Below are positions 13,109 to 57,676 of a DNA stretch of 64,000 bases, one piece after another. Location: the NCBI RefSeq assembly GCF_040938485.1, contig NW_027270922.1:2418001-2482000 (forward strand). Reading direction: 5' to 3'. This DNA is from Diadema antillarum. Its lineage: Eukaryota. The notes beneath the pieces are model-generated. The model saw nothing but the letters and a program-made list of their open reading frames with translations. It was not told the origin of the DNA and searched no databases. Each line of letters begins with the position of its first letter. Position 1 is the stretch's first letter. Both the position numbers and the translations under genes were made by a program.

Positions 13109-14663
13109 CTAAGGTGTTATTCTAAACTTGTACATTTCCTCGTAGTAGGGCATTTCCTTCTCGGCAACCTCCCTGATATCATTTGTCACCCCATCAAGAG
13201 AAGCGGAAGTGGAGGAAGGTTTAAAACAAGTACTCTTAAAGGCGTTGGCAAACCACAGGTTATAACGCGGAGCCTCGAGGACGTTCGAACACACACTGTG
13301 CCACTTCAGGACCACATCGGATGAGGCGTCCCAAGTTACGTAATCCTCGGAGTACGGGATACCCAGTGCGCGGAAGAGCAGTGGAAGTATGATTGCCGGA
13401 TCCTCCATGAGTTCATCGATGTCGACAATGACCGGGTTGTTATCGACGTTTTCTCGAATGTGGCACCACAATTTGTGGATTTCCCTAAAAGCGTAAAACG
13501 TTCCTTCCTCCGGGGGTGGTGCAAAATCCATAATATGGAAGTTTTCCGGGTCCACTTTCGGTATGCCCCATGGTAGGTCTTCTGGATCCACTCCTTCTAC
13601 TGATTTCAGGAATGTCTTCCGAAGAGATTTGTACGCCTTCACAGGATGTCGTATGAGGAAGCAATGTCGAAAACCACTGGATGGATCAGGGAGGTACTTG
13701 TATCGGCTCGGAGGCATGCCGGTGGCCATGTCTTTGATGAAGACAAATTTCGTGGTGGGAAGAATTGAGTCGAATTTTTGCTTTAGCCTAACAGGTCTGT
13801 GGATAAGGACAGGAGTAATTGTAGTAATGAATCCTCTTTGACTTCTCATACACGATTAAAGATCATTAAAATACAACGCTTAAGATGTTGATTATGCAGA
13901 ATAAGAATATTTGAAGATGAATAACATTTTCACTGCATCCTAATTGATATCGACTTACTTAAAGGGTAATTGTAATTTAGATCAAGTTCGCTTGGTATAG
14001 TTCTTTAGGTTTTGTAAGCCATTGGCTGATTGGCATTGTTTGAGTCTAGGAGGAAAGGGAAGTAGTGAGTATTCTACCTCATTCCTAGTTTTGAATTCAA
14101 TATTTTTATAAGTTGCTGAACGTACTAAACAGAATCGACGCAATCACGCCATTGTCTATTGCAACAAGTGCTTATTTTCTCCAAGGATTTAGGATTAAGG
14201 TTAGGGTTGTGATAACGGTTTAGGTTTGGTTTGATGTAATGATTAGGATTGGATTGAAGATTACGTTGGTGGGAAGGATGTTTGGCTTAGCGTGCAGATA
14301 TTTTATGGGAGCAATTCTCGCAGGAGTTAATGTCATGGAATCCATACAGACATGGTACGTTTCGTGGAAAAAAAAAACCACTTACGACAATAGATCGAGA
14401 TTGAAGCTCTGTGTGTCGACGCCCAAATTCAAACTTTTTGCAGCATCCAGGTAAACCTCTTCGTTACCAGCAATATCAAGAGGAAGCGGATCGGATTTAT
14501 ATAGTTCCCTGGCAAACCTGGAAATGACATACGGCTCGAGCCAGACTTCGGCGCCGTCAACGAAGCTCATGCATTTTGTCATCGCTGTCGACACCGAGCG
14601 GGGAACGCACCACATGATGACTCGTGCACGCCCGTCTTCGGTCGTTTTGGGGTCAGTAGCCAT
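13109..14663 (-). CDS. Sulfotransferase-fold protein copy 1 (Sulfotransfer_5 / BCAT-like N-terminal family); exons 14663-14386 and 13796-13109, 321 aa
   Basis: P-loop-like WCVPRSVST, 3'-phosphate motif FLIRHPVKAYKS, IVDIDELMEDP...LGIPY. GT-AG phase-2 intron gives an in-frame spliced ORF (278+688 nt). Confidence 0.88.
14135..14342. mobile_element. MITE in the coding intron of copy 1 (same insertion as in copies 4 and 5; left boundary approximate)
   Basis: gacattaactcctgcgagaattgctccc arm and TTAGGG-like core; site empty in copies 2 and 3. Confidence 0.6.
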
Positions 14664-14995
14664 TTTATTGCTCCTACAAAGAGTTTTAAGCAGTTTCAAG
14701 AAGATATTGTTACAGAGAGAAGGAAGTGCCTCAAACGCAGTAATAGAAAGTTAACATTCACTAGACAATATTAATGTTGCAATACTGGTTCCTTCAAATG
14801 ATCGAATAAGTGGTAACCATTTTCAGCATCTAAACTGCACCTTTCATTATCATAATTCGAATAAAGATGTAGAGTTTCACAAATCTAATGAACGTTAGTG
14901 ATCTAAATAGATACCAGTTTGATCGGTAGTTTTGTTTCGAGCGGCTGATCTCCCAGTAGCAACATTTAGAATTAGGAACGTATATAAACCTGCAA

Positions 14996-15063
<68 letters not shown>

Positions 15064-15238
15064 AAATGTACATTCTGAATCGATGACCGAGCCCCTATAT
15101 CGTCGCTCAAGAAAAGACGAACTTCATCTGCATAGTTTCAAACAAGTGTATCAAATTCTTTGGTGAAGAAGCAAAACTATCTAATGGATATGTAGCAGTA
15201 GCTAAGCTCGATATCGTACCATGCGCTGTAAAGCTTAC

Positions 15239-15590
15239 CAGTGCACGCCCTGTTTGCGGGAAAAATTGTCCCTCTTCCCTTTGGGATCTCTTCGTGTCAG
15301 CAAACCTCCGACGAATGGTCCGATGTTAATTGTGTCTAGCGTTTTGAGTACAAGTATGTGTGTTCGATGTCTCGCAGTGGTACCTTCTATCAAATCTTGG
15401 CTCTTTGTTGTTGACACACAACGATCTTACAAACTTTGTGAAGTGGTTCGGTCTCACGGTGGCGTGATAGTAAAGTCAACGTGATTAACTTGCGATAGCT
15501 ACAAAGCATTTTTAGTTGTGTACCTGACCTTCGTCCGACATAACGACATGAATGTGTAAACGTCAAGTTATACGACCTTTTCAGAATTCA
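15239..15590 (-). promoter_or_regulatory. Conserved upstream module / putative non-coding first exon of copy 1 (donor GT at 15238)
   Basis: Homologous to the modules of all other copies; AGGTCAGGTACA at 15530-15519; ends CTG|GTAAGC. Confidence 0.6.
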
Positions 15591-15843
15591 TTAATCATAT
15601 TCTTGATGGTAATGACAATATCTGAATATGAATGTTTTATCAAATCCGTTTATTTGACATTACTTGTAATATATTTTAACCCTGATTGCAATATCCGCAC
15701 TAAATGAGATATTTGAAGCGTAATGGAAACAAAGACAACAGCTCTGCTCGGTTTCTCTTTCTTTGCTTGTCTCTGTGATGCCATTAATATCACTGACATT
15801 TTCTTTTTTATTGTGAGATAAGAATATGAATTAGACAAACATA

Positions 15844-16020
15844 GAGCAGTGATTTGGTTCAGTCGGTAGCGCGTTGTGCCTCCAGATAATGGACCCAGGT
15901 TTGATTCCCTATAGTCGATCTGAGCAATGCTGTGTGTCATCATATAGTGTGGGAGGGTCCCAACTCATGCACGTAAAAGATCATGATTTTACTTGTCGCC
16001 AAGAGCAGGGTGCGCACAAC

Positions 16021-16021
<1 letters not shown>
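15844..16021 (+). mobile_element. tRNA-derived SINE, 3'-truncated, abutting (TA)n
   Basis: A-box-like tggttcagtcgg and B-box-like ggtttgattcc; body matches 27078-27400. Confidence 0.7.
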
Positions 16022-16067
<46 letters not shown>

Positions 16068-16175
16068 CTGAATTGCTGACGGAAAAACGAACTTCACCTG
16101 TATAATTTACAGGTGAGGAAGCAAAAGTACTCTCTGCTATTCTCTTGATCTCGTGCCATGCGCTATATAGCTTAC

Positions 16176-16332
16176 CGGTACACGGCCTGTTGCGCTAAAA
16201 ATTGTCCCTCTTTCCTTTTGAGATCTTTTCGTGTCAGCAACCCTCCGACGAATGGTTCGATGTTAATTGTGTCAAGCGTTTTGAATGCAAGTGTGTGTTG
16301 ATATCTCGCAGTGGTACTTTCTATAATATCTT

Positions 16333-16369
<37 letters not shown>

Positions 16370-16545
16370 GGGCACAAGGTGATCTTACAAACTTTGTGAA
16401 ATGGTTGGTCTCACGGTGGCGAGATAGTAGAGTCAACGTGATTGATTTGCGAAAGCTACAAAGCATTTTGAGTTGTGTGTCTGAACTTCGTCCGTCATGA
16501 TGAGATGAATGTGTAAACTTCAAGGTTACAGGACCTTTTCAGAGT
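16176..16545 (-). promoter_or_regulatory. Orphan second upstream module pointing toward copy 1 (donor GT at 16175)
   Basis: Homologous to 15239-15590; ends CCG|GTAAGC on the minus strand. Confidence 0.55.
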
Positions 16546-16989
16546 ACATTAGTTTTCTTCTTTGTGATAAAACAGTGTGTATGTAGATATGTTTGTCAAA
16601 TTAAAAAAAAAACCTAGAGACAGATTTGCTTGATGCAAATTTCGCTATATCTGCAAGATGTATAATTCATTTCCAATTGACCAAAACACACCACGTGGAT
16701 ACCCCATCATTTACACATCAGTAACGTAGCGGTGTCGGCCTGTCCCAGCCTGTCCCAGCCTGTCCCAGCCTCTACGTTACTGATGTGAAGAGTCTATATG
16801 CCTGAAATCCACACACTGTGTTTGATCAAGTGCAAAGGAATTATGTATTGTTCCAGATATAGCGAAAGTTGCATGAGGAAATTCTGTCTCCGGGATTTTT
16901 TGATTTGTTCAAATAACTTCTACGAGTTATGTCTGGCCGAATAAACGGTTTTGAAAAGGCTATCTACTCAACATAAAGAAGATGACTAA

Positions 16990-17345
16990 TGTATTCTGAA
17001 AAGGTCGTGCAACCTTGGTGTTTACACATTCAATTCATTATGTTGGACGAAGGTCAGGTACACAATTGAATTTTTTTTTTTTTTTGCTTTCCCTATTACA
17101 GTAATCACATTGACTTCACTATCACGCCCCCGTGAGGTTGAACCACTTCACAAAGTTGTTAAGATCGCTTTGTGTCAACAAGAAAAAGACAAGCTATGAT
17201 AGAAAGTACCACCTCGAGATATAGAACACACTTCCATTCAAGACGCTAAACACAATCTGCATCGAACCATTCGTCGGAGGGTTGCTGACGCGAAAAGCTC
17301 TCAACGTGAAAGGGTGGCAATTTTAACGCAACAAGGCGTGTACTG
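16990..17345 (+). promoter_or_regulatory. Upstream module / putative non-coding first exon of copy 2 (donor GT at 17346, acceptor before 17739)
   Basis: AGGTCAGGTACA at 17051; ends CTG|GTAAGC. Confidence 0.6.
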
Positions 17346-17748
17346 GTAAGCATCATAGCGCATGGTACGAGATCAGTCGAATAGGAAAGGCTACTCTTAC
17401 ATCCATAAGATAGTTTTGCTTCTTGATAAAAAGTAATTTATAAGGAGAGAAACTTTGTAGAGTGATGAAGCAGTGTCGTTCGTCAACGACTAAGAAGTAA
17501 TCTATCTGATAGGCCACTATATGTTTTATACATGGTTGTGTAACTGAACTTTTTTTTTCGAACTGCAAAAATGTAAGAGGAGGTTAGATTCTTAAAATTG
17601 TAATTATTTGATCTTTTGAAGAACCATGTTTGCAACTCAACTCTTGTCGGGTGGATGTTAGCTCTTTTTCATTTCGTTTCAATCACTTTCTTTCCTCTGG
17701 AACAATATCGTCTTTAACCCGATGACCACCATTTGCAGAAGGAATAAA

Positions 17749-19045
17749 ATGGCCACTGACCCAAGAACGGCAGAAGACGGGCGCGCACGAGTCATCATGT
17801 GGTGCGTTCCCCGCTCGGTGTCGACAGCAATGACAAAATGCATGAGCTTCGTTGACGGGGCCGAAATCTGGCTGGAGTCATACGTCATTTCCAGGATGGC
17901 CAGAGAATTCCGTAAACTATATAATTCCGACTCCGACTCGCTTCCTGCTGAATTTGATGGTAACGAAGAGGCTTACCTGGATGCAGCAAAAAATTTGAAT
18001 TTCGGAGGTGACACACAGAACTTCAAACTCGATCTATTGTCGTAAGTGTTATGTTTTATTAAACTTACCATGTCTGTTTGGCAGTGTTTGTGTCAAATTT
18101 GTTTAATATACTCAGTAATGAAATAAAGAAACAATATAATGAAAAATAGGAGTGAGGACGAATACTTACGACTTGCCTTTCCTCCTAGACTCAAACAATG
18201 TCCAATGGCTTGCAAAACGTAAAGAGCTATGCCAAGTAAACTTGAACTCTTGATCTAAATTACAATTGCTTAATGGTTTTGTTTATCCTATTCGAGAAGT
18301 CAATAAAAAACAACAATAACAAAGCATGTCTATGATATCTTTTGTTCTTATCCACAGACCTGTTAGACTGAAGCAAATATTCGACTCGATTCCTCCCACC
18401 ACGAAATTTGTCTTCGTCAAAGACATGGCCTTTGGTATGCCACCAAGCCGATACCAGTATCTGCCTGATCCATCCAGTGGTTTTCGACATTGCTTCCTTA
18501 TACGACATCCTGTGAAGGCGTACAAATCCTTTCGGAAGACATTGCTGAAATCAGTAGAAGGAGTGGATCCCAAGGATCTACCACAGGGTATGCCGAAACC
18601 AGACCCAGAAAAATTTGATGTTATGGATTTTGCACCGGCACCGGAGGAAGGAACGTTTTACTTTTTCAGGGAAATCCACGAATTGTGGTGCCACATTCGA
18701 GAAAACGCCGATAACAACCCGGTCATTGTCGATATCGATGAACTCATGGAGGATCCGGCAACCATACTTCCACTGCTCTTCCGCGCACTCGGTATCCCGT
18801 ACTCCGAGGATTACCTAACTTGGGACGCCTCATCCGATGTGGTCCTGAAGTGGCATAGTGTCTGTTCGAATGTCCTCGAGGCTCCGCGCTATAAACTGTG
18901 GTTTGCCAACGCCTTTAAGAGTACTTGTTTTAAACCTTCCTCTACTTCCGCTTCTCTTGACGGGGTAACAAAGGATATCAGGGATATTGCAGAGAAGGAA
19001 ATGCCGTACTACGAGGAAATGTACAAGTTTAGAATAACCCCTTAG
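17749..19045 (+). CDS. Sulfotransferase-fold protein copy 2; exons 17749-18041 and 18358-19045, 326 aa
   Basis: Same motifs; intron 18042-18357 GTAAG...CACAG, in frame (293+688 nt). Confidence 0.88.
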
Positions 19046-20949: not shown

Positions 20950-21380
20950 TACCCTTTTTTCAGTTTTGGTAATTACAGGCAGCTGTTTTACATGACAGTA
21001 TTAAAACACGAATATTGTAGTTGGACATATAGGCAACCTTCAAAGGACCTACCGTATGAATTAAAGAAGAATCCGTTGAGTGAAAGAAAAAACCTGCTAG
21101 AAAGAACACTGTCCCACAGTGAGAAACACAATGTGAAACACGGAGTGAATATAGAACGAACACAGTGTGGAATCTCGTCACATTCTGTTAAATTAGAGCG
21201 TTTTAACGTCATGAGCACATTGTGAATCATCCTTTCACAGTACGGATTCACAGTGTGAAACAACATTACTATGTGAGCTTTCTGTGCAAAAGTACACCAC
21301 AATTCGCAATCATCTTCACACTGTTGTATTCGAGCGTTTTCGCATAACAGTCGACCATGTAAACACATTGTGAACACACT
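20950..21380. repeat. Unclassified repeat rich in CACAGTG/CACACTG motifs (second copy ~25935-26360)
   Basis: Direct comparison shows near-identity between the two segments. Confidence 0.7.
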
Positions 21381-21397
21381 GTACCGGTAAAACTTAC

Positions 21398-21760
21398 CGG
21401 TACGCGGTCTGTTGCGCTAAAAATGTCCCTCTTTCCTTTTGAGATCGTTTTGTGTCAGCAACCCTCCGACGAATGGTTCGATGTTAACTGTGTCTAGCGT
21501 TTTGAGTGTAAGTATGTGTTCGATATCTCGCAGTGGTACTTTCTATCATATCTTGGCTCTCTCTTTGTTTTGTTTTGTTTTTTGTTGTTGACACAAGGCG
21601 ATTTTACAAACTTTGTGAAATGGTTGGTCTCACGGTGGCGAGATAGTAAAGTCAACGTGATTGATTTGCGAGAGCTACAGAGCATTTTCAATAATTGTGT
21701 GTCTGAAGTTCGTCCGACATGATGAGATGAATGTGTAAACTTCAAGGTTACACGACCTTT
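21398..21760 (-). promoter_or_regulatory. Orphan upstream module in antisense orientation to copy 2 (donor GT at 21397)
   Basis: Homologous to 16176-16545; ends CCG|GTAAGT on the minus strand; no adjacent coding exon. Confidence 0.5.
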
Positions 21761-22359
21761 TCAGATATAGTTTTCTCCTTAGTGGTAAAGACAGTGTGTC
21801 AGTAGATATGTTTGTCAAATATGGCAAAACCCTAGAGACAGATTTGCTTAATACAAATTTGGCTATATCTGGATGATGTATATTTCATTTCCAATTGACC
21901 AAACACACCATGTGGGTAGAAAACTATCCCCTCTACACATCAGTAACGTAGCCGTGTTGCCCAGTTCCACCCATTGAGTCCCGCTCGTTGGGGGCACAAT
22001 TTCGTGAAAATGACTATGCATCCGCATTTGGGCCAACAGTGAAAAGCGAAGTCACAAGTGTTGCACATTCAGTTCAGTCATTTTCGAGAAATTGTGCTCA
22101 ACGAATAGAACTCGTTTAAATGGATGGGACAGGCCGACACTTCTACGTTTCTGACGTGAAGAGTGTATATGCCTCAAACCCACACCCTGTGTTTCATCAA
22201 TTGCAAAGGAATTATGCATGTTCCAGATATAGCGAAAGTTGAATGAGGAAATTCTGTCTCCGGGATTTTTTGATTCGTTCAAATAACTTCTACGAGTTAT
22301 GTCTGGCCGAATAATCTACTCATACACTGTCATTACCATAACGAAGATGACTAATGCAT

Positions 22360-22711
22360 TCTGAAAAGGTCGTGAAACCTTGGTGTTTACACATTCAATT
22401 CATTATGTCGGACAAAGGTCAGGTACACAATTCAAAATATTTTTGTTGCTTTCGCTATTAAAGTAATCACATTGACTTCACTATCACGCCACCGTGAGGT
22501 CGAACCACTTCACAAAGTTGTTAAGATCGCTTTGTGTCAACAAGAAAAAGACAAGCTATGATAGAAAGTACCACCTCGAGATGTAGAACACACTTCCATT
22601 CAAGACGCTAAACACAATCTGCATCGAACCATTAGTCGGAGGGTTGCTGACGGTCTCAAAAAGGTCTCAAAGTGAAAGAGGGGCAATTTTAACGCAACAA
22701 GGCGTGTACTG
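22360..22711 (+). promoter_or_regulatory. Upstream module / putative non-coding first exon of copy 3 (donor GT at 22712)
   Basis: AGGTCAGGTACA at 22416; ends CTG|GTAAGC. Confidence 0.6.
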
Positions 22712-22774
22712 GTAAGCATCATACCGCATGGTACGAGATCAAGCGAAAAGGAAAGGCTACTATTACATCCATAA

Positions 22775-22916
22775 NNNNNNNNNNNNNNNNNNNNNNNNNN
22801 NNNNNNNNNNNNNNNNNNNNNNNNNNNNNNNNNNNNNNNNNNNNNNNNNNNNNNNNNNNNNNNNNNNNNNNNNNNNNNNNNNNNNNNNNNNNNNNNNNNN
22901 NNNNNNNNNNNNNNNN
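22775..22916. other. Assembly gap (N run) in the 5'-UTR intron of copy 3
   Basis: Run of N. Confidence 0.99.
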
Positions 22917-23244: not shown

Positions 23245-24682
23245 ATGGCCACTGCAGAAGACGGGCGTGCACGAGTCATCATGTGGTGCGTTCCCCGCTC
23301 GGTGTCGACAGCAATGACAAAATGCATGAGCTTCGTTGACGGGGCCGAAATCTGGCTGGAGTCATATGTCATTTCCAAGATGGCCAGAGAACTCCGTAAA
23401 CTATATAATTCCGACTCCGACCCGCTTCCTGCTGAATTTGATGGTAACGAAGAGGCTTACATGGATGCAGCAAAAAATTTGAATTTTGGAGGTGACACGC
23501 AGAACTTCAAACTCGATCTATTGTCGTAAGTGTTATGTTTCATTAAACGTACCATGTCTGTATGGCAGTGTTTGTGTCATATTTGTTTAATATACTCAGG
23601 AATGAATTACAGAAAAAAAGAAGATGTAGTTTAAAAGTAGAAATGAGGACGAATAATTACGATTTGACTTTCCTCCTATGTCAATGTCAATGGCTCGCAA
23701 AAGGTAAAGAGCTTTACCAAGTAAACTTGGAACTCTTGATCTAAATTACAATTACACTTAAGTAAAGTGATCGCATACCTACGTTCATACAGGTATATGC
23801 TCGTCATTATCCTTCTGTAGTGTTACTCTTTTAAGTCAATTAGGATTTGGTGAAAGGTTCTTCATTTTCACATAAAAAAATCTGTGTAACCAACATCTTT
23901 AGCGTGTCATCTTAATTGTTTTGTTAATCGTATATTAGAAGTCAATTTAAAAAAACACACACAATACTATGATATCTTTTGTCCTTATCCACAGACCTGT
24001 TAGACTGAAGCAAATATTCGACTCGATTCCTCAAACCACGAAATTTGTCTTTGTCAAAGACATGGCCTTCGGTATGCCACCAAGCCGATACCAGTATCTG
24101 CCTGATCCATCCAGTGGTTTTCGACATTGCTTCCTCATACGACATCCTGTGAAGGCATACAAATCCTATCGGAAGACAATGCTGAAAGCAGTAGAAGGAG
24201 TGGATCCCAAGGATCTACCACAGGGTCTTCCGAAAGTGGACCCAGAAAACTTCGATGTTATGGATTTCGTGCCGCCACCGGAGGAAGGAACGTTTTACTT
24301 TTTCAGGGAAATCCACGAATTGTGGTGCCACATTCGAGAAAACGTCGATAAAAACCCAGTAATTGTCGACATCGATGAACTCATGGAGGATCCGGCAACC
24401 TTACTTCCACTGCTCTTCCGGGCACTCGGTATCCCGTACTCCGAGGATTACGTAACTTGGGACGCCTCATCCGATGTGGTCCGTAAGTGGCACAGTGTCT
24501 GCTCGAACGTCCTCGACGCTCCACGCTATAACCTGTGGTTTGCCGACGCCTTTAAGAGTACTTGTTTCAAACCTTCCTCTACTTCCGCTTCTCTTGACGG
24601 GGCGACAAAGGATATCATCGAGGTTGCCGAGAAGGAAATGCCATACTACGAGGAAATGTACAAGTTTAGAATAACACCTTAG
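23245..24682 (+). CDS. Sulfotransferase-fold protein copy 3; exons 23245-23525 and 23995-24682, 322 aa
   Basis: Same motifs; GT-AG phase-2 intron, in frame (281+688 nt). Confidence 0.88.
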
Positions 24683-38826: not shown

Positions 38827-40424
38827 ATGGCCACTGACGCAAACATGGCAGGAGGTGACGGAAACGCACGAGTCATCATGTGGTGCGTTCCCCGTTCGGT
38901 ATCGACAGCAATGACAAAATGTATGAGCTTCGTTGACGGAGCCGAAATCTGGCTCGAGCCGTATGTCATTTCCAGGTTTGCCAGAGAACTATATAATTCC
39001 GATCCGCTTCCTCTTGAAATTGATGGTAACGAAGAGGTTTACCTGGATGCAGCGAAAAATTTGAATATGGGAGGTGACACACAGAACTTCAAACTCGATC
39101 TATTGTCGTAAGTCTTACGTTTTTGAAGCGTACCATGTCTGTATGGGTTTTATGACATTTGCTTCTGCGACAATTGCTCCCATGAAATATCTGCACGGTA
39201 AGCCAAACATAAATTCTATCCACAAACAAAACCTAAACCTAACCCTAATCTTCATATCAAACTATACCGAAACCCCTATCATAATCCTAATTCTAGCGCT
39301 AAGTCTTTAGAGATAATAAGACCGGAATAATTGTCGCAGGAGCAAATGACGACTCACCTTCTGAATGACAGTGCTTTCGTACCATTTGTTTATTAAACTC
39401 AGTAGAAATTAAAGAGAAAAAAACAAATTGAAAATAGGAATGAGGGCGAATACTCTCGACTTGATTATCCTCCTAGACTCAAACAATGTCAGTGTCTTGC
39501 AATACTTAAAGAGCTATGCCAAGTAAACTAGAACTCTTGATGTAAATTACAATTTTTACACTTTGAGTAGGTAATATGTATGTCAATTATAATGCGGTGA
39601 AATGTTATGAATCTTCACATTTCTTTTTAAATTCTATGTAGCTAACATCTAAAAAAAGCATTTCATCTTTTTAATCGTGTATGAGAAGTCAAAGGAGATA
39701 CGTAACTATAATCACTTCTCCCCTTATCCACAGACCTGTTAGACTAAAGCAAATATTCGACTCGATTCCTCAAACCACGAAATTTGTCTTCGTCAAAGAC
39801 ATGGCCTTCGGCATGCCACCGAGCCGATACAAGTACCTGCCTGATCCATCCAGTGGTTTTCGGCATTGCTTCCTCATACGACATCCTGTGAAGGCGTACA
39901 AATCCTTTCGGAAGACTTTGCTGAAATCAGTAGAAGGAGTGGATCCCAAGGATCTACCACAAGGTATGCCGAAACCAGACCCAGAAAACTTCAATGTTAT
40001 GGATTATGCACAGCCACCGGAGGAAGGAACGCTTTACTTTTTCAAGGAAATCCACGAATTGTGGAGCCACATTCGAGAAAACATCGATAACAACCCGGTC
40101 ATTGTCGATATCGATGAACTCATGGAGGATCCGGCAACCATACTTCCACCGCTCTTCCGCGCACTGGGTATCCCGTACTCCGAGGATTACGTAACTTGGG
40201 ACGCCTCATCCGATGTGGTCCTAAAGTGGCACAGTGTGTGTTCGAACGTCCTCGAGGCTCCGCGTTATAACCTGTGGTTTGCCAACGCCTTTAAGAGTAC
40301 TTGTTTCAAACCTTCCTCCACTTCCGCTTCTCTTGACGGGGCGACAAAAGATATCAAGGAGGTTGCCGAGAAGGAAATGCCGTACTACGAGGAAATGTAC
40401 AAGTTTAGAGTAACCCCTTCGTAA
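38827..40424 (+). CDS. Sulfotransferase-fold protein copy 5; exons 38827-39107 and 39734-40424, 323 aa
   Basis: Same motifs; GT-AG phase-2 intron, in frame (281+691 nt). Confidence 0.88.
39146..39358. mobile_element. MITE in the coding intron of copy 5, degenerate 9-bp TSD (Mutator-like)
   Basis: Flanks gtctgtatg (39137-39145) and ttctgaatg (39359-39367); the empty site gtctgtatg|gcagtg is present in copy 3. Confidence 0.7.
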
Positions 40425-40504: not shown

Positions 40505-40653
40505 NNNNNNNNNNNNNNNNNNNNNNNNNNNNNNNNNNNNNNNNNNNNNNNNNNNNNNNNNNNNNNNNNNNNNNNNNNNNNNNNNNNNNNNNNNNNNNNN
40601 NNNNNNNNNNNNNNNNNNNNNNNNNNNNNNNNNNNNNNNNNNNNNNNNNNNNN
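40505..40653. other. Assembly gap (N run)
   Basis: Run of N. Confidence 0.99.
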
Positions 40654-46150: not shown

Positions 46151-46408
46151 AATTCTATTGTAAGCTTTGGAAAAACGACTTAACTATCACGCCATCACGA
46201 GACCGACCTACTTTACAAAGTTTGTAAAATCTCTTTGTGTCAACAAAAGAGAGGTTTAGATAGATAGATAATAGTGGCAAGATATCGAATACACACTGGC
46301 ATTTACAACACGACACGCATAAGATTTGAACTAAATTCGGGTTGCTAACACGAAAAACGTATCGAAGGGTATAGAGGGTCCGTTTTCAGCTAAATGCTAC
46401 GTGTATAG
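46151..46408 (+). promoter_or_regulatory. Diverged upstream module of copy 6, 3' part (donor GT at 46409; 5' part at ~44990-45029)
   Basis: ctatcacgcc...ctttacaaagtttgtaa...tgtgtcaacaa blocks shared with the other modules; ends TAG|GTAAGC. Confidence 0.55.
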
Positions 46409-46820: not shown

Positions 46821-47224
46821 ACAACAACATTATTATTCCTACCCTGAGAAATTATTAGTTTTGAGCCGATTTCTTACAAGTGAAGGATGGAGTGATGGTG
46901 ATGGGGTGTTAACTTTTTACTCTTATTCGTCCTCTATAAATTGACATTAATTACAGTTTCACATCATTTGTATAACAATAGAAATGTTAGGATATAACAC
47001 CCAATCACATCATTCAATCCTTTACTTGGGAGAAATCTGCTCAAAACTAAACATTTCCCAGGGGTATGACTAATGTTGTTGTTAACTGTATATATATATA
47101 TATATCTATATATATATTTCGGATCTGATACTTTAACAAAAGAAGAGAAAAGTGATAGGCGAGAAGTCGTGTGGTTGATGTGATGTTGCGGAGGGATCCT
47201 ACACTGACCGTACGCAGCAGCCAA

Positions 47225-47830
47225 CGATGTCAGTATTGCTTTTTTATGTCGCTTTTTTTTGTGCGAAATTGTAACAATTCACAGAGTGACGTTACGAAGC
47301 AGCACACAATGTCATCATTGCTTTGTTATGCCCCATTGTTTTTTTTCCGAAATTGTACATTTCATAGAGGGACGTTTCGGAGCAGTGCGCGATGTCAGAA
47401 GTGCTTTGTTATGTCACAATTGTTTTATTCGAAATTGTAATATTTCACCGAGTGACGTTACGAAGCAGTGCGCGATGTCAGCATTGCTTTGTTATGTCAC
47501 AATTGTTTTGTTCGAAATGGTAACATTTCACAGAGTGACGTTTTGAAGCAGCGCACGATGTCACCATTGCTTTATTATGTCACAGTTGTTTTGTTCGAAA
47601 TTGTAACATTTCACAGAATGACGTTACGAAGCAGCGCACGATGTCAGCATTGCTTTGTTATGTCACAATTGTTGTGTTCGAAATGGTAACATTTCGCAGA
47701 CTGACGTTACAAACCAGTGCGCGATGTCAGAAGTGATATGTGACGTCATAGCTTTTTGTTAGAAATTGTTATACTATTTTCACAGAGCGATGGTATACGA
47801 AGCAGCGCACGATGTCTCGCTTTGTGATGT
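47225..47830. repeat. Tandem array of ~83-bp units (~7 copies)
   Basis: Unit starts at 47264, 47348, 47430, 47513, 47596, 47679, 47761. Confidence 0.9.
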
Positions 47831-48089
47831 CACGATCGCTTTATGACATCGTTTTTTTTATAGTACAGTGTATTATACTCTTTACAAAATATCGTCATAA
47901 AGTGACGAGATTTTGCAAATGGTGTGCCATGGAGTGACAAACATGCCAACATTCTGACATACCATGATCAGGTGAAGCTCTCTCAACAAAATCAGTCTTT
48001 AAAAAATTATATTGATTTGAGCAACGTTATCGATGAAATATGTGTATCTGCTTTCCATAACCCGTTAGCCATCCTCTAGGAGAAATAAA

Positions 48090-49422
48090 ATGGCCACTGA
48101 CGCAGAAGCTGCATACGACGAACCAGCACGGGTTATCATGTGGTGCTCTCCCCGGTCGGTGTCGACAGGAATGACAAAATGCTTGAGTTTTGTTGACGGG
48201 GCAGAAGTCTGGCTGGAGCCGTACGTTATTTCCAGGATTGCCAGAGAAATTTGTGAAGAATATCTTTCCGTCCCGCTTCCTGCTGATATTGATGGTAACG
48301 AGGAGATCTACGTTGAAACAGCAAAGAACTTAAATTTGGGTGTTGACACAAAGTCCTTCAAGCTCGACCTGCTGTCGTAAGTGTCTTGTTTACAAACAAA
48401 TCATTACCGTATGATAGTAGGTGTATGTCCTACTTGTCTCAGAATTGTGTAGAGCCTAATGTACATTATGAAAATTTTTTGAAAGTACAAATATAGGAAT
48501 GGGAAAAATGTTTTGTATTACAACTTGGTCCGCTTATGCTAAAACAATCTCAAATGTTTGCACAACTTACACGACTTTACAAATACACTCAAAGAAAATG
48601 ATTGTTACATTCTTTGTACCCCAAATCTGAAGTGTATTACTTCATAATGATATTAGAAATTCAAAGCGTACACAAAAATATATAGAAACTAGAAAACTCA
48701 TCAATCATTATCTCTATCCCCATATCCATAGACCTGCTAAACTGAAGCAAATATTCGACTCGATTCCTCCAACCAAGAAATTTGTCTTCATCAAAGACAT
48801 GGCCTTCGGCATGCCACCAAGCCGATACAAGTACCTGCCTGATCCATCCAGTGGTTTTCGACATTGCTTCCTCATACGACATCCTGTGAAGACGTACAAA
48901 TCTTTTAGGAAAACACTGCTGAAAACAGTAGAGGGATCAGATCCCGATCAAGTACTATGGAATATGACGAAACCGGACCCAGAAACCTTCAATGTTATGA
49001 ATTATGCACCGGCGCCCGAGGAAGGAACGCTTTACTTTTTCAAGGCAATCCACGAATTATGGTGCCACATTCGAGAAAACGTCGATGACAACCCGGTCAT
49101 TGTCGACATCGATGAACTCGTGGATGATCCGGCAACATTACTTCCACTGCTCTTCCGGGCACTGGGTATTCCGTACTCAGAGGATTACGTAACTTGGGAC
49201 GCCTCATCCGATGTGGTCCGTACGTGGCAGAATGTCTGTTCAAATGTACTTGAGGCTCCACGCTATAATGTGTGGTTTGCCAATGCCTTTAAGAGTACTT
49301 GTTTCAAACCTTCTCCCACTTCCGCTTCTCTTGACGGGGCGACAAAGGATATCAGGGAGGTTGCCGAGAAAGAAATGCCGTACTACGAGGAAATGTACAA
49401 GTTTAGAATAACCCCTTCGTAA
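48090..49422 (+). CDS. Sulfotransferase-fold protein copy 6 (most diverged complete copy); exons 48090-48376 and 48732-49422, 325 aa
   Basis: WCSPRSVSTG, FLIRHPVKTYKS; intron GTAAG...CATAG, in frame (287+691 nt). Confidence 0.87.
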
Positions 49423-51529: not shown

Positions 51530-51660
51530 AGCTCACATGCCTTTAGGCACGACAAATGCACAATTAGATTCTTTCAAGAAGGCACTGAAAACTTATCTGT
51601 TTAAGTACTGATGATTGTATATGTTATGTCAAGCGCACGGAGAATTTTGTTGTGAATTAT
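51530..51660 (+). mobile_element. Short LINE 3'-end remnant
   Basis: LDSFKKALKTYLFKY* is typical of CR1/L2-group ORF2 C-termini. Confidence 0.45.
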
Positions 51661-52756: not shown

Positions 52757-53140
52757 AGGGATAAGTACAGTATTGGTGGAGATGAGAATTGGGCTTTCAA
52801 CTTTTTGCAAGATACCAAGAAAACACTTATGATATAGTACAGAGCATACCATTTTAAGAGGAATTCAAAGTTTATTTGATGGAAATCGGGTTTGGAATGA
52901 CTGAAACATCCAAAAACAAAGTAAAACAAAGCAATTGTAATGAAGTGTGGGTCCTACACTTTATTAGAATCGCTCTTTTTTGGATATCTCAGCCATTTCA
53001 AAACCAATTTTCATCAAATAAACGTTGAATTAATCATAGAATTACATGCTCTTTCATATTTCATAAGAAGTTTCGCATTATTTCACCAAAAAAATGTTAG
53101 AAACCTGAAATTAGGTCTGAACCAAAACTGTATGATCCCC
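52757..53140. mobile_element. TTAA-flanked MITE (Kolobok-like)
   Basis: TTAA|AGGGATAAGTACAGTATTGG...CCAAAACTGTATGATCCCC|TTAA. Confidence 0.7.
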
Positions 53141-53144
53141 TTAA

Positions 53145-55961
53145 GGTCCTGTCACACCTTTCAGCGTCAGGGTGTAAGCCATGCGTATGACTTGTCGTAG
53201 GCATTTTATTTTTGCTTTCCGGAGGTTCTCGCAGATGGCCCGCACATGACAGTGCCTAGTACGTATCTTTTTCAATTCAATTTATTTTCATATTTCTCAA
53301 TGGAGGAATGTACATCAAATATAATAAAAACATAGTGAATCATAATATCCGGCTTGGATGCACAGTAAGTTAATGTAAACATATAAAACATAGCGGTCAA
53401 TCATCGTACGTTTGCTCTATGTATAACGCTAAAGAAATATGATGGAACCTACTTAAAAGCGAGCTTGTTAAGCGTAGGTCCCAAATTCTGAATAGAGTGC
53501 AAGATACATATGAGGAGCACGGATGCAACGTAGGACCAAAATAAATAAAAACAAAAATGAAAGGCAAAATACCCGGGGCAATAACAGAATCTTCTCGATA
53601 CAAAATAGTGATATACAGACAACCACATTCTGCAGACGTAAGAACAGTTGATTTAGCAATGTTCACAATAGTGTAATAATACGATTTGAATAATGCTGAA
53701 AAAAAAAACAACTCGACATGCGAGTCCTCGGAAGAGATACGGGAAGCCTAAAGAGTGAACATACAAGTACTAACATTCAAAGAAAAATTAGAATTAGAAT
53801 TAGAATTACCAGCCATAGTGTGCACGCAAGTCCTATTTCTCCTCAGTCAAGTTTAAAGGCAGTGCCACACCTTTCCGGGCACGCCTTGCGTGCGACTTGC
53901 GAAGAACAATTTTGACTACCCGGAGGTCCCCGCAGATGACCCGCACATGACAGTACCTAGCACGTATCTCACCCGTAGTCGCCCGGAGGTGCGCACGTCA
54001 ATCTTTTTACTCGCAAACATGTTTAGGCCCTGTCACATCTTTCCGGGCAAGCTACGTGGGATTGTTGCGTGTAGGAATTTTCCAGCATACCAGACAATTT
54101 TCCGAGGGCGGACAAGGATTTGGGCGAGTCAGTGCATGTGTCTTAGTTGCTAGACGCGTTCTACTTAAATTCTATACTTGCGGGTATACTGTGTGACCTG
54201 TGTTCCAGGCACGTGGGGGCTGACAACTCAGTGATGGAATTCCTCTGAAGGAATGGCATAAGTCTGACAAAATGTCATTATTTTGACTGCATATATGGGG
54301 ACTGCGAAGTACCTGCGTGGGAGTTGCCTGCGAGATGCCTCCGCTCAGGGCCTCCTACTGGCGTTTTGAGTGGACCTCTCCGGGCATCCCCGCGACTCAC
54401 CCGGAAAAAGTTTTGGTCATGCTCAAAACTTGGCTGAGGTTAAATCGGACTTCGTTCGCACATCCGGGCAACTACAGGCGAGATATGCGCTAGATACTGT
54501 CAGGTGCGGACCAACTGCGGAGAGCTCCAGGTAGCAAATTTGTTTCCTCGCAAGTCAAGCCGCAAAACTTCCCCAGATACGGTATGATAAGGCCTTGAGT
54601 ATGCTCAAAACTTGTTCCGAGTGAGTCGTGGGGGTACGCTCGCAGAGGTTAACGCAGAACACCAGTAGGAGACCCATACCGGCATCATCTCTCAGGCAAC
54701 TCCAACGCAAGTACTTCTCAGTACCTGTAAGTCGCTCGTAACAGAAAACGGATCGGTCTCAAAGCTCTCACGTAAGTCATTACCTACTTACCTTCTACTT
54801 GCGTGTATCCCAGTTGACCTGCGTGAGAGCTTCGAAGCCGATCCATTTTCAGTTCCGAGTGACATACGGGCACTGCGAAGTACCTGCGTTACAGCTGCGT
54901 GGTAACTGCGTGGGTGTTGCCTGAGAGGTGCTGCCGCCAAGGGCCTCTTACTCGTGTTCTACGTTGACCTCTGCGGGCAAACCCCCGCTACTCATCTTTA
55001 ACAAGTTTTGAGCGTGCTTAAGGCCTTGTCACATCGTGTCTGGGGAAGCCTTGTGTGTTGACTTGCGGAAAACAACATTATTTTGCTACCCCGAGCTCCC
55101 CGCAGATGGCCTGCACCTAACAGTACCTAGCACGTATCTTGCCCTTCGTTGTCTGAGATGTCATGCTCAAAACTTGTTCCTGGTGAGTCGCGCGTATTGC
55201 CTTGCAAAGGTCCACGCAGAACACCAGTATGAGACCCGTACTTGCCGCAGGTCACAGGCAGTCAATCCGCTTGAAATACGTAAGTTGCCCGTGGGTTTAT
55301 GCCTACGCGCCAGACACACACGTCATCTGCCGGCATTCTTCGAGCATAATAAGGGTGTTTTACTGGCAAGGAATGGTGTCGATACTGTTAACATCCGTGA
55401 AGCTGGTGTGGAGCCAGCTATGCGAGCAAATTGCGTGGACGCTGAGGGTCAGTTATATACTGCCTTTCTGCTGGTTTACTTGAGAGTCGGCTGCTACCAA
55501 GATAATGACATTCTGTGCTACCTCTGGCATATTATATTCCTTCAGAGGGATTCCTTCAGCGAGTTGTCAGCCCTCACTCCATACTCATCCGCCTGACACG
55601 CAGGTCACACGGAATACATTAAGTACATAGATTGTAAGTAGCACTGGTCCAACAGGTAAGGTGCATGCGAAACGCCCCCAGATCCTTGCCCGCCCGCCCG
55701 CAAAAAAAATAAATAAATGAATAAAAATTGTCCATCATGGTGGAAAATCCCCACATAACAAGCCCGTGTAGCTTGCCCGGAAAGGTGTGACAGCTAGGGC
55801 CTAAACTTGGCTGCAGGTAAATGGGACTTGCTTGCTCAACTCAGGGCAACTACAGGCGAGATACGTGGAAGGTACTGTCATGTGCGGGCCATCTGCGGGG
55901 ACATTCGGATGGCAAACATTGTTCTTCGCAAGGCTTGCACCGGAAAGGTGTGACAGAGCCC
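53145..55961. mobile_element. Cluster of nested PIF/Harbinger-like MITEs (TIR GGCCCTGTCACACCTTTCCGG-like)
   Basis: TIR-like starts at ~53145, 53858, 54026, 55021; reverse-complement ends at 55801 and 55961. Arms 53858-54000 and 55835-55961 are inverted copies. Confidence 0.75.
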
Positions 55962-56109
55962 ACCAATCTCGAAGTCATATAAATCGTGGTCATGCATGGT
56001 TTTGATAGTTACGTGACAAAACTTTATACAACCAAGAGGAACACAATGGGTTAGACAGCCCGACACCACATTTATTGGCTTGTTGCGTATCAGCAGGGTA
56101 ACCCCTGAG

Positions 56110-56300
56110 GACAATTATCCCCCCCCCCCTCCCCGGCTAAATACGGGTTAGTGATAAGGTCAGAGCAAAGATTAGGGTTAGGGTTAGATTAAGGGTTAGA
56201 GTTTGGGTTACGGTTAGGATTAAGTTCAGGACTGGGATAAGGGTTTAGTGTCAGGGGAAGGGTCTGGGGTATATTTAATTGCCAAGGGGGTAATTGCCCT
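56110..56300. repeat. TTAGGG-like degenerate repeat, probable MITE core
   Basis: attagggttagggttagattaagggttagagtttgggttacggttagg; resembles the core of the intronic MITEs. Confidence 0.5.
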
Positions 56301-56549
56301 AAACACGCTTGTTGATGTGAGCAGTTGATATCCCCGAAAGCAACATGCACCGCGTGCAAGCTCAATTTCAAGGGAATAATGCACATTAGTTTAGAGACAG
56401 TGCAGTATAAGTTACACTCTGGAAATCTTTCCAGAGTGTACTTTAACTAATGCAAATAACTTGCATTGGCAATATCACATTTATATCATAGAACACTCCA
56501 GTTAAAACAGTCCATTCCATTGACAAGAGGACTGACGCATTCAGAAAGA

Positions 56550-56877
56550 AGGTCTTGTAATATAACCTTGAAGTTCATACATTCATTTCTTAATGTCGGA
56601 CGAAGGTCAGGTTTACAATTTAAACTGCTTTCCTAAGATTCGCAAGCCAAATATTGACTTACATACCACGCCACCGTAAGACTGGGCCACTTTACACAGT
56701 TTGTAAGATCGGTTTGTGTCAATAATATAGGGATACCACAGCAAGATATCGAACACACATTTGCATTCGAAGCGCCGAACGCATCGCCGTATTTGATCGT
56801 TCGTCCGAGGGCTGTTGACGCCAATACGTCTCAGAGGGAAAAACTAGAACATTTTGAGCGGAACACGTTGTGCACTG
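56550..56877 (+). promoter_or_regulatory. Upstream module / putative non-coding first exon of copy 7 (donor GT at 56878)
   Basis: AGGTCAGGTTTA at 56604; ends CTG|GTAAGC. Confidence 0.55.
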
Positions 56878-57383
56878 GTAAGCTTAATGATAAATGTTAT
56901 GAGATCAAGCAAAAAGCAAAGTTATGTATCGATATGACAGTTTTGCTTCGTTAGCGAAGAATATGCATCTGTGTTACAAGTCATTTATAAAAATAGAAGC
57001 TATGCATAATAACGCTTGTCTTTTAATTATCGGTAAAGCAGTGTGGTCCGTCATTGAGTAATGTGGAAGAGAAACCACATGAGTTTAAAGCTTGGTAATT
57101 TCAAGAGAGATTAGCTGGTCTACACAAAATCATTATCCAAAATAATTTGTACAGTAATTGAATAGAGACTCTTATTTTTTCTTTTCTAGGAAGGGATTAA
57201 TGTATCGTAAGTCCAGGTATTGAAAAATGTTAATCTTTTCTCTCGAATGTTAAAGAACCAATGATTATATCAACGTAACTTGTAGTTTGAATTTTGGAAT
57301 TTCTTTCACTTCATACAAAATGTTCCTCCCTCTAGAGTAAAATTTTAGACGGTCTGTTAATCACCCTTTGTAGGAGGGATAAG

Positions 57384-57676
57384 ATGGCCACTGACGCACG
57401 AACTGGGGGCGACGGACCCGCAAGAGTCATCATGTGGTGCGTTCCCCGCTCGGTGTCGACAGCAATGACAAAATGCATGAGCTTCGTTGACGGGGCGGAA
57501 GTCTGGTTGGAGCCGTACGTCATTTCCAAAGTAGCCAAGGACGTCCGTAAACTGTATCATGCTGACTCCGACCCGTTTCCTCTTGATATTGATGGCAACG
57601 AAGAGGTCTACCACGAGACAGCAAAAGATTTAAACTTGGGAGGTGACCTACAGAACTTCAAACTCGACCTGCTGTC
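57384..57676 (+). CDS. Sulfotransferase-fold copy 7, first coding exon only (98 codons, intact donor); last exon absent from the window
   Basis: MATDARTGGDGPARVIMWCVPRSVST...DLLS|GTAAG. No exon-2 homologue found in 57677-64000. Confidence 0.75.

What the first reader, a model, noticed from the sequence alone, without database searches (positions are those of the whole stretch)
13109..57676. Seven-copy tandem array of soluble sulfotransferase-fold genes: candidate specialised-metabolite or detoxification cluster
Seen: six intact spliced ORFs of 321-326 aa plus a seventh first exon, all with the same phase-2 intron. All carry a P-loop-like PRSxST strand at the N-terminus. The six complete copies also have R-x7-S (RHPVKAYKS), matching the spacing of the sulfotransferase 3'-phosphate-binding motif, and a DELxxDP...LG segment. 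No signal peptide or membrane anchor is present. Established: these are PAPS-binding elements. The C-terminal W...WF...ST.F pattern recalls the Sulfotransfer_5 family (the N-terminal domain of plant BCAT-like proteins), not classical SULT1/2, and its substrates are largely unknown. Inference: repeated local amplification without ORF decay suggests selection for dosage or substrate diversity. If the host is an echinoderm, sulfated saponins or steroids are candidate products.
Basis: partly seen in the sequence, partly recalled or inferred. Interest (0 to 1): 0.8.

Follow-up and report, generated by a model that had tools for sequence, protein, structure and literature searches.

The report
Sea-urchin tandem array of sulfotransferase genes

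Summary
The window is Diadema antillarum contig JBFRCO010000034.1. It holds six intact two-exon genes of 321, 326, 322, 323, 323 and 325 aa plus an orphan first exon. All share one phase-2 GTAAGT...CAG intron.

- Every full-length copy passes Pfam's threshold for PF19798 Sulfotransfer_5.
- A family profile hits the CurM and OLS sulfotransferase crystal structures (E 1e-11 and 1e-8).
- An AlphaFold model (pLDDT 92) matches only PAPS-dependent sulfotransferases (Z 13.7).
- The donor-binding and catalytic residues R22, S25, T26, E43, K119, R147 and S155 are invariant in all paralogs.

Corrections:
- c1 is inverted.
- The array has nine loci. c0 lies just before the window and c8 just after it.
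- c7 is a haplotype-specific allele with a 1.1-kb deletion of exon 2.
- Both N runs are intergenic.

The array is monophyletic within Diadema. Its order and orientation are conserved in D. setosum, and it is under purifying selection (dN/dS about 0.36).

No other biosynthetic genes are linked. Expression and substrate are untested, so the saponin, steroid or detoxification role remains speculation. First-stage notes record similar arrays on other pieces of this genome. This is a new member of a known kind and of modest interest.

The parts
13109..13796 (-). c1 exon 2 with stop codon (gene c1, 321 aa, = XP_071509479/P0003)
14386..14663 (-). c1 exon 1. It holds the PRSVST loop and E43. It lies head-to-head with c2.
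17749..18041 (+). c2 exon 1 (gene c2, 326 aa, = XP_071509489/P0001)
18358..19045 (+). c2 exon 2 with stop codon
23245..23525 (+). c3 exon 1 (322 aa). NCBI's model P0188 starts 12 residues further in.
23995..24682 (+). c3 exon 2 with stop codon
28614..28894 (+). c4 exon 1 (323 aa, = P0195)
29528..30218 (+). c4 exon 2 with stop codon
38827..39107 (+). c5 exon 1 (323 aa, = P0189)
39734..40424 (+). c5 exon 2 with stop codon
48090..48376 (+). c6 exon 1 (325 aa, = XP_071509830/P0005), the most divergent copy in the window
48732..49422 (+). c6 exon 2 with stop codon
57384..57676 (+). c7 orphan exon 1. It is intact, with its donor site, but its own exon 2 is absent in this haplotype. NCBI model XP_071509842 (P0202, 427 aa) joins it to the next gene, c8.
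57998..58030 (.). Junction of a deletion of about 1.09 kb, relative to contig JBFRCO010000142.1 (L005 10638-11728). The deletion removed the end of the c7 intron, all of exon 2 and about 270 bp of 3' flank.
   Evidence: exon 2 of the intact allele lies at L005 10770-11460
22775..22916 (.). N run, intergenic, ending 329 bp upstream of the c3 ATG. Not read or filled.
40505..40653 (.). N run, intergenic, starting 81 bp downstream of the c5 stop. Not read or filled.
16972..17424 (+). Reference copy of a module of about 450 bp. It is found 0.3-1 kb upstream of the ATG of c1, c2, c3, c4, c5 and c7, in each gene's orientation: 15166-15608(-), 22337-22774, 27621-28018, 37918-38339, 56525-56949. Two extra inverted copies lie at 16117-16566 and 21393-21765. 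It may be a promoter, a 5'-UTR segment of the duplicated unit, or a repeat.

Best explanation
The region is a genuine, old, lineage-specific tandem array of stand-alone cytosolic sulfotransferase genes of Pfam family PF19798 (Sulfotransfer_5) in Diadema antillarum.

What each gene encodes. Each gene gives a protein of about 325 aa with the sulfotransferase alpha/beta fold. By homology:
- PAPS is held by the strand-loop-helix P21-R22-S23-V24-S25-T26 (5'-phosphosulfate site).
- PAPS is also held by R147-x7-S155 (3'-phosphate site).
- Sulfuryl transfer to a hydroxyl (or amine) of an acceptor is catalysed by an Arg22/Glu43/Lys119 set, of the kind used by tyrosylprotein and CurM/OLS sulfotransferases. 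This replaces the histidine base of classical SULTs.

Paralogs. They keep the donor and catalytic residues strictly and differ mostly in segments 44-80 and 160-200. I infer that these segments line the acceptor site, so the copies probably differ in acceptor preference.

History. The array arose by segmental duplication of a unit of about 5.5 kb, including one inversion (c1). This happened in the diadematid lineage, after it separated from the camarodont urchins sampled here. The array has since evolved by birth and death under purifying selection.

Shown: gene structures, family membership, fold, residue conservation, orthology and synteny, and selection. Inferred: PAPS dependence, the catalytic mechanism, cytosolic location, and acceptor diversification. 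Unknown: the acceptor(s) and expression.
For: Gene models:
- Models and shared phase-2 intron.
- Five copies are identical to RefSeq D. antillarum proteins.

Family and fold:
- All full-length copies score 26.8-33.4 bits against the PF19798 cut-off of 23.2.
- A 73-sequence family profile matches the CurM sulfotransferase 4gbm (E 1.4e-11) and the OLS sulfotransferase 4gox (E 1e-8). PRSxST aligns to PRSGST, E43 to the Glu of 'PPELHLL', K119 to the Lys of 'VDKSP', and RHPxxxxxS to RHPYSVIES.
- AlphaFold2 model: pLDDT 92.1, pTM 0.91.
- The Foldseek top 50 are all PAPS sulfotransferases.
- VIA-align gives Z 13.7 (4gox), 13.5 (4gbm) and 12-13 (TPST1/2) over residues 12-321.
- Arg78/Glu99/Lys158 are the catalytic residues of TPST2 (PMC10951654). 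The R-to-E spacing of 21 residues is the same here.

Conservation:
- R22, S25, E43, K119, R147 and S155 are at least 90% conserved family-wide.
- The same residues are invariant in all nine paralogs.
- No transmembrane or signal-like segment.

Selection and history:
- Paralog dS 0.15-0.44 and dN/dS 0.25-0.51.
- No 30-codon window exceeds 0.62.
- The Diadema array forms one clade (98/98), with one-to-one D. setosum orthologues for c0, c1, c2, c4, c6 and c7.
- Order and orientation are the same on the D. setosum chromosome.
- Ortholog dN/dS is 0.07-0.34.
Against: - There is no biochemical datum for any animal PF19798 protein. Literature searches found only family listings.
- Expression was not shown. 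The only run holding the sequence is contig data that covers the c2 intron, so it is DNA-like.
- The Pfam match is modest. Its best stretch covers only profile positions 138-222, and the N-terminal part scores weakly on its own.
- Foldseek TM-scores to solved structures are only 0.40-0.46, so acceptor-site geometry cannot be read from known structures.
- The correspondence of catalytic residues rests on a profile alignment and on spacing, not on a superposed ligand complex.
Confidence: 0.8

Rival explanations
1. The enzymes use PAPS, but the sulfate is a transient leaving group rather than the end product. Precedents for such 'activating' sulfotransferases are CurM/OLS, which sulfate a beta-hydroxyl to drive decarboxylative elimination, and also retinol dehydratase and LGS1. 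The products would then be olefins or rearranged compounds, not sulfate esters.
For: The closest solved relatives, by both sequence and structure, are the CurM and OLS activating sulfotransferase domains. Retinol dehydratase and LGS1 also appear among the fold matches.
Against: - CurM and OLS sulfotransferases work inside polyketide synthase modules next to an acyl carrier protein and a thioesterase (my own knowledge of those pathways). The Diadema proteins are stand-alone, and no PKS or thioesterase gene is linked.
- Sequence identity to them is only 12-14%.
- The tyrosylprotein sulfotransferases score nearly as high.
Confidence: 0.08
2. The array is a phase-II detoxification battery. It would consist of broad-specificity conjugating enzymes for dietary algal phenolics or terpenoids and other xenobiotics of a generalist grazer, rather than biosynthetic enzymes for an endogenous specialised metabolite. 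This is a rival about biological role and is compatible with the enzymology above.
For: - The array is homogeneous, with no linked biosynthetic partners.
- It shows birth-and-death evolution: a copy-number difference between D. antillarum (9 loci) and D. setosum (6 genes called), and a segregating deletion allele of c7. From general knowledge, this pattern is typical of detoxification gene families.
- Many further PF19798 paralogs exist across echinoderms.
Against: - There are no expression data from gut or digestive tissue.
- Some orthologue pairs are extremely conserved (c2: dN 0.005, dN/dS 0.07), which suits a fixed endogenous substrate better.
Confidence: 0.4
3. The copy number is an assembly artefact. 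The RefSeq assembly of D. antillarum retains both haplotypes, so apparent paralogs could be haplotigs or mis-joined alleles.
For: The assembly is 84% BUSCO-duplicated (PMC13511894). The locus is represented on three contigs: JBFRCO010000034.1, 142.1 and 164.1. Two N runs lie inside the array.
Against: - Copies within the window differ by dS 0.15-0.44 and by 9-22% of residues. That is far above the 2.5% heterozygosity, whereas the allelic contigs are about 96-99% identical.
- The independent chromosome-level D. setosum assembly has the same genes in the same order and orientation.
Confidence: 0.02
4. The proteins are catalytically inert PAP/PAPS-binding or scaffold proteins, or they have another P-loop-type activity such as a kinase.
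For: No activity has been measured. The Pfam score is modest.
Against: - All catalytic-site equivalents are invariant across nine paralogs and at least 90% conserved across 73 family members.
- Purifying selection acts on them.
- Every significant structural neighbour is an active PAPS sulfotransferase.
Confidence: 0.05

Closest known systems
Pfam PF19798 Sulfotransfer_5, including the N-terminal domain of plant 'branched-chain-amino-acid aminotransferase-like protein 2' and stand-alone proteins of bacteria, fungi, cnidarians and echinoderms
   Same: All copies pass the family's gathering score. The nearest ESM Atlas clusters are PF19798 clusters from Mucoromycota, Echinodermata, Cnidaria and bacteria. 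NCBI names the Patiria miniata relative 'BCAT-like protein 2'.
   Different: The proteins are stand-alone, 321-326 aa, with no aminotransferase domain. They form a Diadema-specific clade. In the papers I could search, no member of the family has a demonstrated substrate.
CurM and OLS 'activating' sulfotransferase domains (PDB 4gbm, 4gox)
   Same: These are the best solved relatives by sequence profile (E 1.4e-11 and 1e-8) and by structure (Z 13.5 and 13.7). They share the PRS(G/V)ST loop, a Glu 21 residues after the Arg, a Lys on the next strand, and RHP-x5-S.
   Different: They are domains of bacterial polyketide synthase modules acting on carrier-protein-bound acyl chains. Identity is 12-14%. 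The Diadema proteins are free-standing animal proteins with extra inserted segments at about residues 45-95 and 160-200.
Tyrosylprotein sulfotransferases TPST1/2 (PDB 5wrj, 3ap1)
   Same: Fold match of Z 12-13. Both have an Arg/Glu/Lys catalytic set (PMC10951654) and a PRSG(T/S)T-type loop.
   Different: TPSTs are membrane-anchored Golgi enzymes acting on proteins (my own knowledge). The Diadema proteins lack any hydrophobic anchor or signal. The profile search listed no TPST chain at E up to 10.
Classical cytosolic SULTs (Pfam PF00685), including the sea-urchin pigment-cell gene sult / sult1c2 (SPU_006187)
   Same: Both are soluble and PAPS-dependent and share the overall fold (Z about 10). 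Both are also multigene families in sea urchins.
   Different: There is no PF00685 hit. The known pigment-cell sulfotransferase is annotated as sult1c2, a name that points to the classical SULT type, although I did not compare its sequence. The array is therefore not that gene.

Membership tests
Pfam PF19798 Sulfotransfer_5 | Whole-protein HMM score at or above the curated gathering score (23.2 bits) | tested here: met
   Scores in bits: c1 28.4, c2 32.5, c3 model 26.8, c4 33.3, c5 31.0, c6 31.8, c0 30.7, c7 intact allele 33.0, c8 allele 33.4. Exon 2 alone scores 22.8-24.3.
Pfam PF19798 Sulfotransfer_5 | Match along the whole domain, both N-terminal donor loop and C-terminal part | tested here: inconclusive
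   The best stretch covers profile positions 138-222 of 226. The N-terminal exon matches positions 2-40 only weakly (12.2 bits, E 0.12).
PAPS-dependent sulfotransferase superfamily | Alpha/beta fold with central parallel sheet, shared with solved sulfotransferases | tested here: met
   AlphaFold2 pLDDT 92.1. All top 50 Foldseek and VIA matches are PAPS sulfotransferases. The best are Z 13.7 with 225 aligned residues and Z 13.5 with 244 aligned residues.
PAPS-dependent sulfotransferase superfamily | 5'-phosphosulfate-binding strand-loop-helix motif | tested here: met
   P21-R-S-V-S-T26 follows strand 13-19 and precedes helix 25-32. It aligns to PRSGST of CurM and OLS sulfotransferases and is invariant in nine paralogs.
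PAPS-dependent sulfotransferase superfamily | 3'-phosphate-binding motif (Arg ... Ser at the strand-helix junction) | tested here: met
   R147-HPVKAYK-S155 follows strand 141-146 and opens helix 149-164. It aligns to RHPYSVIES. R147 is invariant in 73 family members and S155 is at least 90% conserved.
PAPS-dependent sulfotransferase superfamily | Catalytic base and transition-state residues | tested here: met
   E43 and K119 align to the conserved Glu and Lys of CurM sulfotransferase. Both are at least 90% conserved family-wide and invariant in the paralogs. The match to TPST2 Arg78/Glu99/Lys158 rests on spacing and literature, not on superposition.
PAPS-dependent sulfotransferase superfamily | PAPS-dependent sulfuryl transfer measured in vitro | not testable with these tools
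   Needs recombinant protein.
Classical cytosolic SULT (PF00685, SULT1/2) | PF00685 HMM match and histidine catalytic base | tested here: not met
   No PF00685 hit at E up to 1 for c2/P0001 and four relatives, or at E up to 0.1 for the other copies. In a profile search, solved SULT chains appear only at E 0.4-0.8.
Tyrosylprotein sulfotransferase (TPST) | Type II membrane anchor or luminal targeting | tested here: not met
   The maximum 19-residue hydropathy is 1.29, and the N-terminus is polar.
CurM/OLS-type activating sulfotransferase domain | Embedded in a polyketide synthase module next to ACP and thioesterase | tested here: not met
   The proteins are stand-alone at 321-326 aa. No PKS or thioesterase is found in the window or in the 10-kb flanks.
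Plant BCAT-like protein 2 architecture | Fusion of the Sulfotransfer_5 domain to a class IV aminotransferase-like domain | tested here: not met
   PF19798 is the only Pfam family hit. The protein length matches the sulfotransferase domain alone.

The most novel reading that the evidence does not exclude
The Diadema array, and the much larger echinoderm-wide set of stand-alone Sulfotransfer_5 genes, could be the enzymes behind echinoderm-specific sulfated natural products. In sea urchins the candidates are sulfated polyhydroxynaphthoquinone pigments (sulfated spinochromes B and E are reported from Psammechinus miliaris; PMC9605347) or sterol sulfates. In sea cucumbers and sea stars they would be the still unidentified saponin sulfotransferases. 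Each Diadema paralog would be tuned to a different acceptor through the variable segments 44-80 and 160-200. This would give the first biochemical function to animal members of PF19798.
Probability: 0.15. Interest if true: 0.6.

Novelty: new member of a known kind. Interest (0 to 1): 0.3.

Why it matters
Sulfotransfer_5 is a widespread Pfam family. None of the papers I found by searching for the family's name or accession reports an acceptor substrate for any member, and its animal members are annotated only as 'uncharacterized protein'.

This locus offers a clean, well-resolved set for giving the family a function:
- Eight intact, selectively maintained paralogs and one natural null allele.
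- Invariant donor and catalytic residues.
- Variation concentrated in two segments.
- Orthologues available in a second species.

It also shows that sea urchins have a second expanded soluble sulfotransferase system beside the classical SULTs. That is relevant to echinoderm chemical defence and detoxification, in a keystone reef grazer of conservation concern. On present evidence it is an ordinary lineage-specific gene-family expansion, not a new kind of system.

Tried and rejected
1. RNA evidence. Its contigs are 95-99% alike and run through the c2 intron. It is therefore DNA of another haplotype or individual and says nothing about expression.
2. NCBIfam gave only a chance hit (AcsV, 13 bits against a cut-off of 800).
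3. Rfam found nothing in the window.
4. Other long ORFs in the window have no Pfam family, apart from a reverse transcriptase and a weak integrase fragment upstream. No linked partner genes were found.
5. I tested the idea that the array is the known pigment-cell 'sult'. That gene is sult1c2, SPU_006187. I rejected the idea on that annotation only; I did not compare its sequence with the array.
6. Searches for the S. purpuratus and L. pictus orthologue identifiers found no paper. The two D. antillarum genome papers do not mention sulfotransferases.
7. A search combining echinoderm, saponin, sulfotransferase and PAPS found nothing.
8. I could not open the CurM sulfotransferase structure paper. 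The identity of its catalytic Glu and Lys is therefore from memory plus the alignment.
9. I looked for positive selection with pairwise and sliding-window Nei-Gojobori estimates. No window exceeds dN/dS 0.62. No codon-site model program was available.
10. Model coordinates are not exposed, so I could not measure active-site distances or dock PAPS.
11. Locus L001 overlaps two N runs of the window, 9294-9435 and 22775-22916. I did not read it at those places.

Full report
**Observation**

The ORF table shows paired ORFs of about 95 aa and about 240 aa recurring seven times between 13.1 and 57.7 kb. A motif search for the shared donor and acceptor places a ..TC|GTAAGT donor and a ..CAG|A acceptor in each copy. 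Conceptual splicing then gives intact CDSs of 321, 326, 322, 323, 323 and 325 aa (c1-c6). It also gives a seventh first exon (c7, 57384-57676).

c1 is on the minus strand, head-to-head with c2. The others are on the plus strand. tblastn with c5 finds no further exon-2-like sequence up to the window's end.

**N runs**

The three N runs are at 9294-9435, 22775-22916 and 40505-40653.
- The second ends 329 bp upstream of the c3 ATG.
- The third starts 81 bp after the c5 stop.
- No exon or intron contains N, so no reading frame depends on them.

The sequences flanking 22775-22916 are collinear with two segments that lie 22 bp apart in the paralogous c2 unit (16771-17408 and 17431-18267). The flanks therefore belong together, although the true gap length is unknown. 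Similarity to other units ends 14-20 bp before the third run, so nothing can be said about continuity there. I did not fill or look up these letters.

**Identity of the DNA**

A protein search with c5 exon 2 returned Diadema antillarum RefSeq proteins. c1, c2, c4, c5 and c6 are identical, letter for letter, to XP_071509479, XP_071509489, XP_071509497, XP_071509516 and XP_071509830. Locus look-ups place the window at JBFRCO010000034.1:2418001-2482000.

That assembly retains both haplotypes: 84% of BUSCO genes are duplicated and heterozygosity is 2.5% (PMC13511894). The same locus does appear on contigs 142.1 and 164.1 as well.

**Family and fold**

- Pfam. Exon 2 alone sits at the threshold for PF19798 Sulfotransfer_5 (22.8-24.3 bits against 23.2). 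All full-length proteins pass it (26.8-33.4 bits). No Sulfotransfer_1 match appears.
- Family size. An exhaustive phmmer search found 454 cluster representatives at E up to 1e-3.
- Solved structures by sequence. A profile of 73 full-length members matches the CurM sulfotransferase domain 4gbm (E 1.4e-11) and the OLS sulfotransferase domain 4gox (E 1e-8).
- Aligned motifs. In that alignment PRSVST pairs with PRSGST, E43 with the Glu of PPELHLL, K119 with the Lys of VDKSP, and R147-x7-S155 with RHPYSVIES.
- Model. AlphaFold2 gives pLDDT 92.1 and pTM 0.91.
- Solved structures by fold. All 50 best Foldseek matches are PAPS-dependent sulfotransferases. VIA-align gives Z 13.7 and 13.5 for OLS and CurM, 12-13 for TPST1/2, and about 10 for classical SULTs, heparan sulfate and glycopeptide sulfotransferases, over residues 12-321.

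TPST2 uses Arg78, Glu99 and Lys158 (PMC10951654). The Arg-to-Glu spacing of 21 residues is the same here (R22 to E43). R22, S25, E43, K119, R147 and S155 are at least 90% conserved in the family and invariant in all nine Diadema paralogs. No segment is hydrophobic enough for a membrane anchor.

**True extent and state of the array**

RefSeq protein clusters and locus look-ups add the following.
- c0. An intact gene (P0199, 327 aa, plus strand) lies 1.5-3.3 kb before the window's start.
- c8. An intact gene lies at window-equivalent 69252-70656. This agrees with an earlier first-stage note of a sulfotransferase ATG beyond the window's end (s1-229955).
- Boundaries. No further gene is called within 10 kb outside c0 or c8. 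The array therefore has nine loci in about 74 kb.
- c7. Contig 142.1 carries an intact c7 (P0203, 327 aa). Aligning it with the window's haplotype shows about 98.7% identity up to window 57998. About 1.09 kb is then present only in 142.1, comprising the intron end, exon 2 and 3' flank. Alignment resumes at window 58030.
- c7 history. D. setosum has the intact orthologue, so the window's c7 is a deletion allele.
- NCBI model. XP_071509842 (427 aa) joins the orphan exon to c8.

**History and selection**

Copies in the window are 78-91% identical in protein. Pairwise dS is 0.15-0.44 and dN/dS is 0.25-0.51. This is far more divergence than between alleles, so haplotig artefacts are excluded.

A maximum-likelihood tree groups all Diadema array genes (98/98). 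Their sister group is the genes of Strongylocentrotus and Lytechinus. The tree pairs c0, c1, c2, c4, c6 and c7 with single D. setosum genes.

On D. setosum chromosome OZ188192.1 the genes lie in the same order and orientation: c0, c1 inverted, c2, a c4-like gene, c6 and c7. They have the same phase-2 intron and similar intron lengths. Orthologue pairs have dS 0.03-0.17 and dN/dS 0.07-0.34.

c3, c5 and c8 have no D. setosum partner among the proteins I sampled, which points to birth and death of copies. Across nine paralogs, overall pN/pS is 0.36 and no 30-codon window exceeds 0.62. The highest values and most of the amino-acid variation lie at residues 44-90 and 150-195. I infer, but did not show, that these segments line the acceptor site.

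**Context and function**

The window otherwise contains only retroelement fragments and ORFs without a family. It has no Rfam match. This is a homogeneous paralog array, not a mixed biosynthetic gene cluster.

The family is large across echinoderms. Many paralogs occur in Strongylocentrotus, Lytechinus, Holothuria, Patiria and Amphiura. Related clusters occur in fungi, cnidarians and bacteria.

The known pigment-cell sulfotransferase of sea urchins is sult1c2, so that gene is not the one seen here. The papers retrieved by the family's name or accession only list it and report no substrate for any PF19798 member. I found no paper on this array.

Sulfated spinochromes exist in at least one sea urchin (PMC9605347). 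Together with sterols and dietary phenolics they are plausible acceptors, but none is supported by data here.

**Expression**

Expression could not be tested. The only run found is DNA-like contig data.

**Verdict**

The fold and family interpretation is supported. The functional reading as a specialised-metabolite or detoxification cluster is untested.

The most likely mechanism is PAPS-dependent O-sulfation of small acceptors by cytosolic enzymes that use an Arg/Glu/Lys catalytic set. The paralogs probably differ in acceptor preference. The array is a lineage-specific expansion of a known but biochemically unexplored family: a new member of a known kind, of modest interest.

First-stage notes report several similar arrays on other pieces of this genome. 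Some of these may be the alternative-haplotype contigs of this same locus.

Noticed in passing
window 57384-58030; L004 10001-23273; L005 10001-11728: c7 is a segregating null allele. About 1.09 kb carrying exon 2 is deleted in this haplotype but present on contig JBFRCO010000142.1. RefSeq model XP_071509842 (427 aa) is a chimera of the orphan c7 exon 1 and the whole of c8.
   Followed up: yes
window 15166-15608, 16117-16566, 16972-17424, 21393-21765, 22337-22774, 27621-28018, 37918-38339, 56525-56949: A module of about 450 bp lies 0.3-1 kb upstream of most copies, in the gene's orientation. Two extra inverted copies lie between genes, and c6 keeps only a 70-bp remnant at 46177-46246. It could be a promoter or 5'-UTR block of the duplication unit, relics of lost units, or a mobile element.
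   Followed up: partly
window 20988-21377 (-) and 25965-26366 (-): A Cys-rich ORF of 129-133 aa is conserved between the c2-c3 and c3-c4 spacers (91.6% DNA identity). The one copy scanned has no Pfam family. It may be chance preservation within a young duplicated spacer, or an unannotated small gene or transposon remnant.
   Followed up: partly
window 2882-3658 and 4691-5491: Retroelement fragments lie between c0 and c1: a reverse transcriptase ORF (PF00078, E 2e-35) and a weak integrase-core ORF.
   Followed up: partly
window 53863-55955: This is the only G+C-rich stretch of the window (0.51 against about 0.38). It is bounded by an imperfect inverted repeat (53863-54285 and 55955-55498, 68%) and holds a 186-aa ORF without a Pfam family. 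It is possibly a transposon.
   Followed up: no
window 47205-47836 and 63332-64000: Two tandem-repeat blocks show up as self-matches: one offset by about 82 bp (81% identity) and one offset by about 158 bp (92% identity).
   Followed up: no
c1-c6 coding sequences: Synonymous divergence is lower in exon 2 than in exon 1 for most pairs, and strikingly so for several. For example, c4-c6 has dS 0.22 against 0.70. It is lowest around residues 210-254. This suggests gene conversion or codon-level constraint in the C-terminal half.
   Followed up: partly
contigs JBFRCO010000034.1, 142.1, 164.1: The locus is represented three times in the public D. antillarum assembly. Some proteins are identical between 142.1 and 164.1, and others between 34.1 and 164.1. 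One contig may therefore be a redundant or mosaic haplotig.
   Followed up: partly
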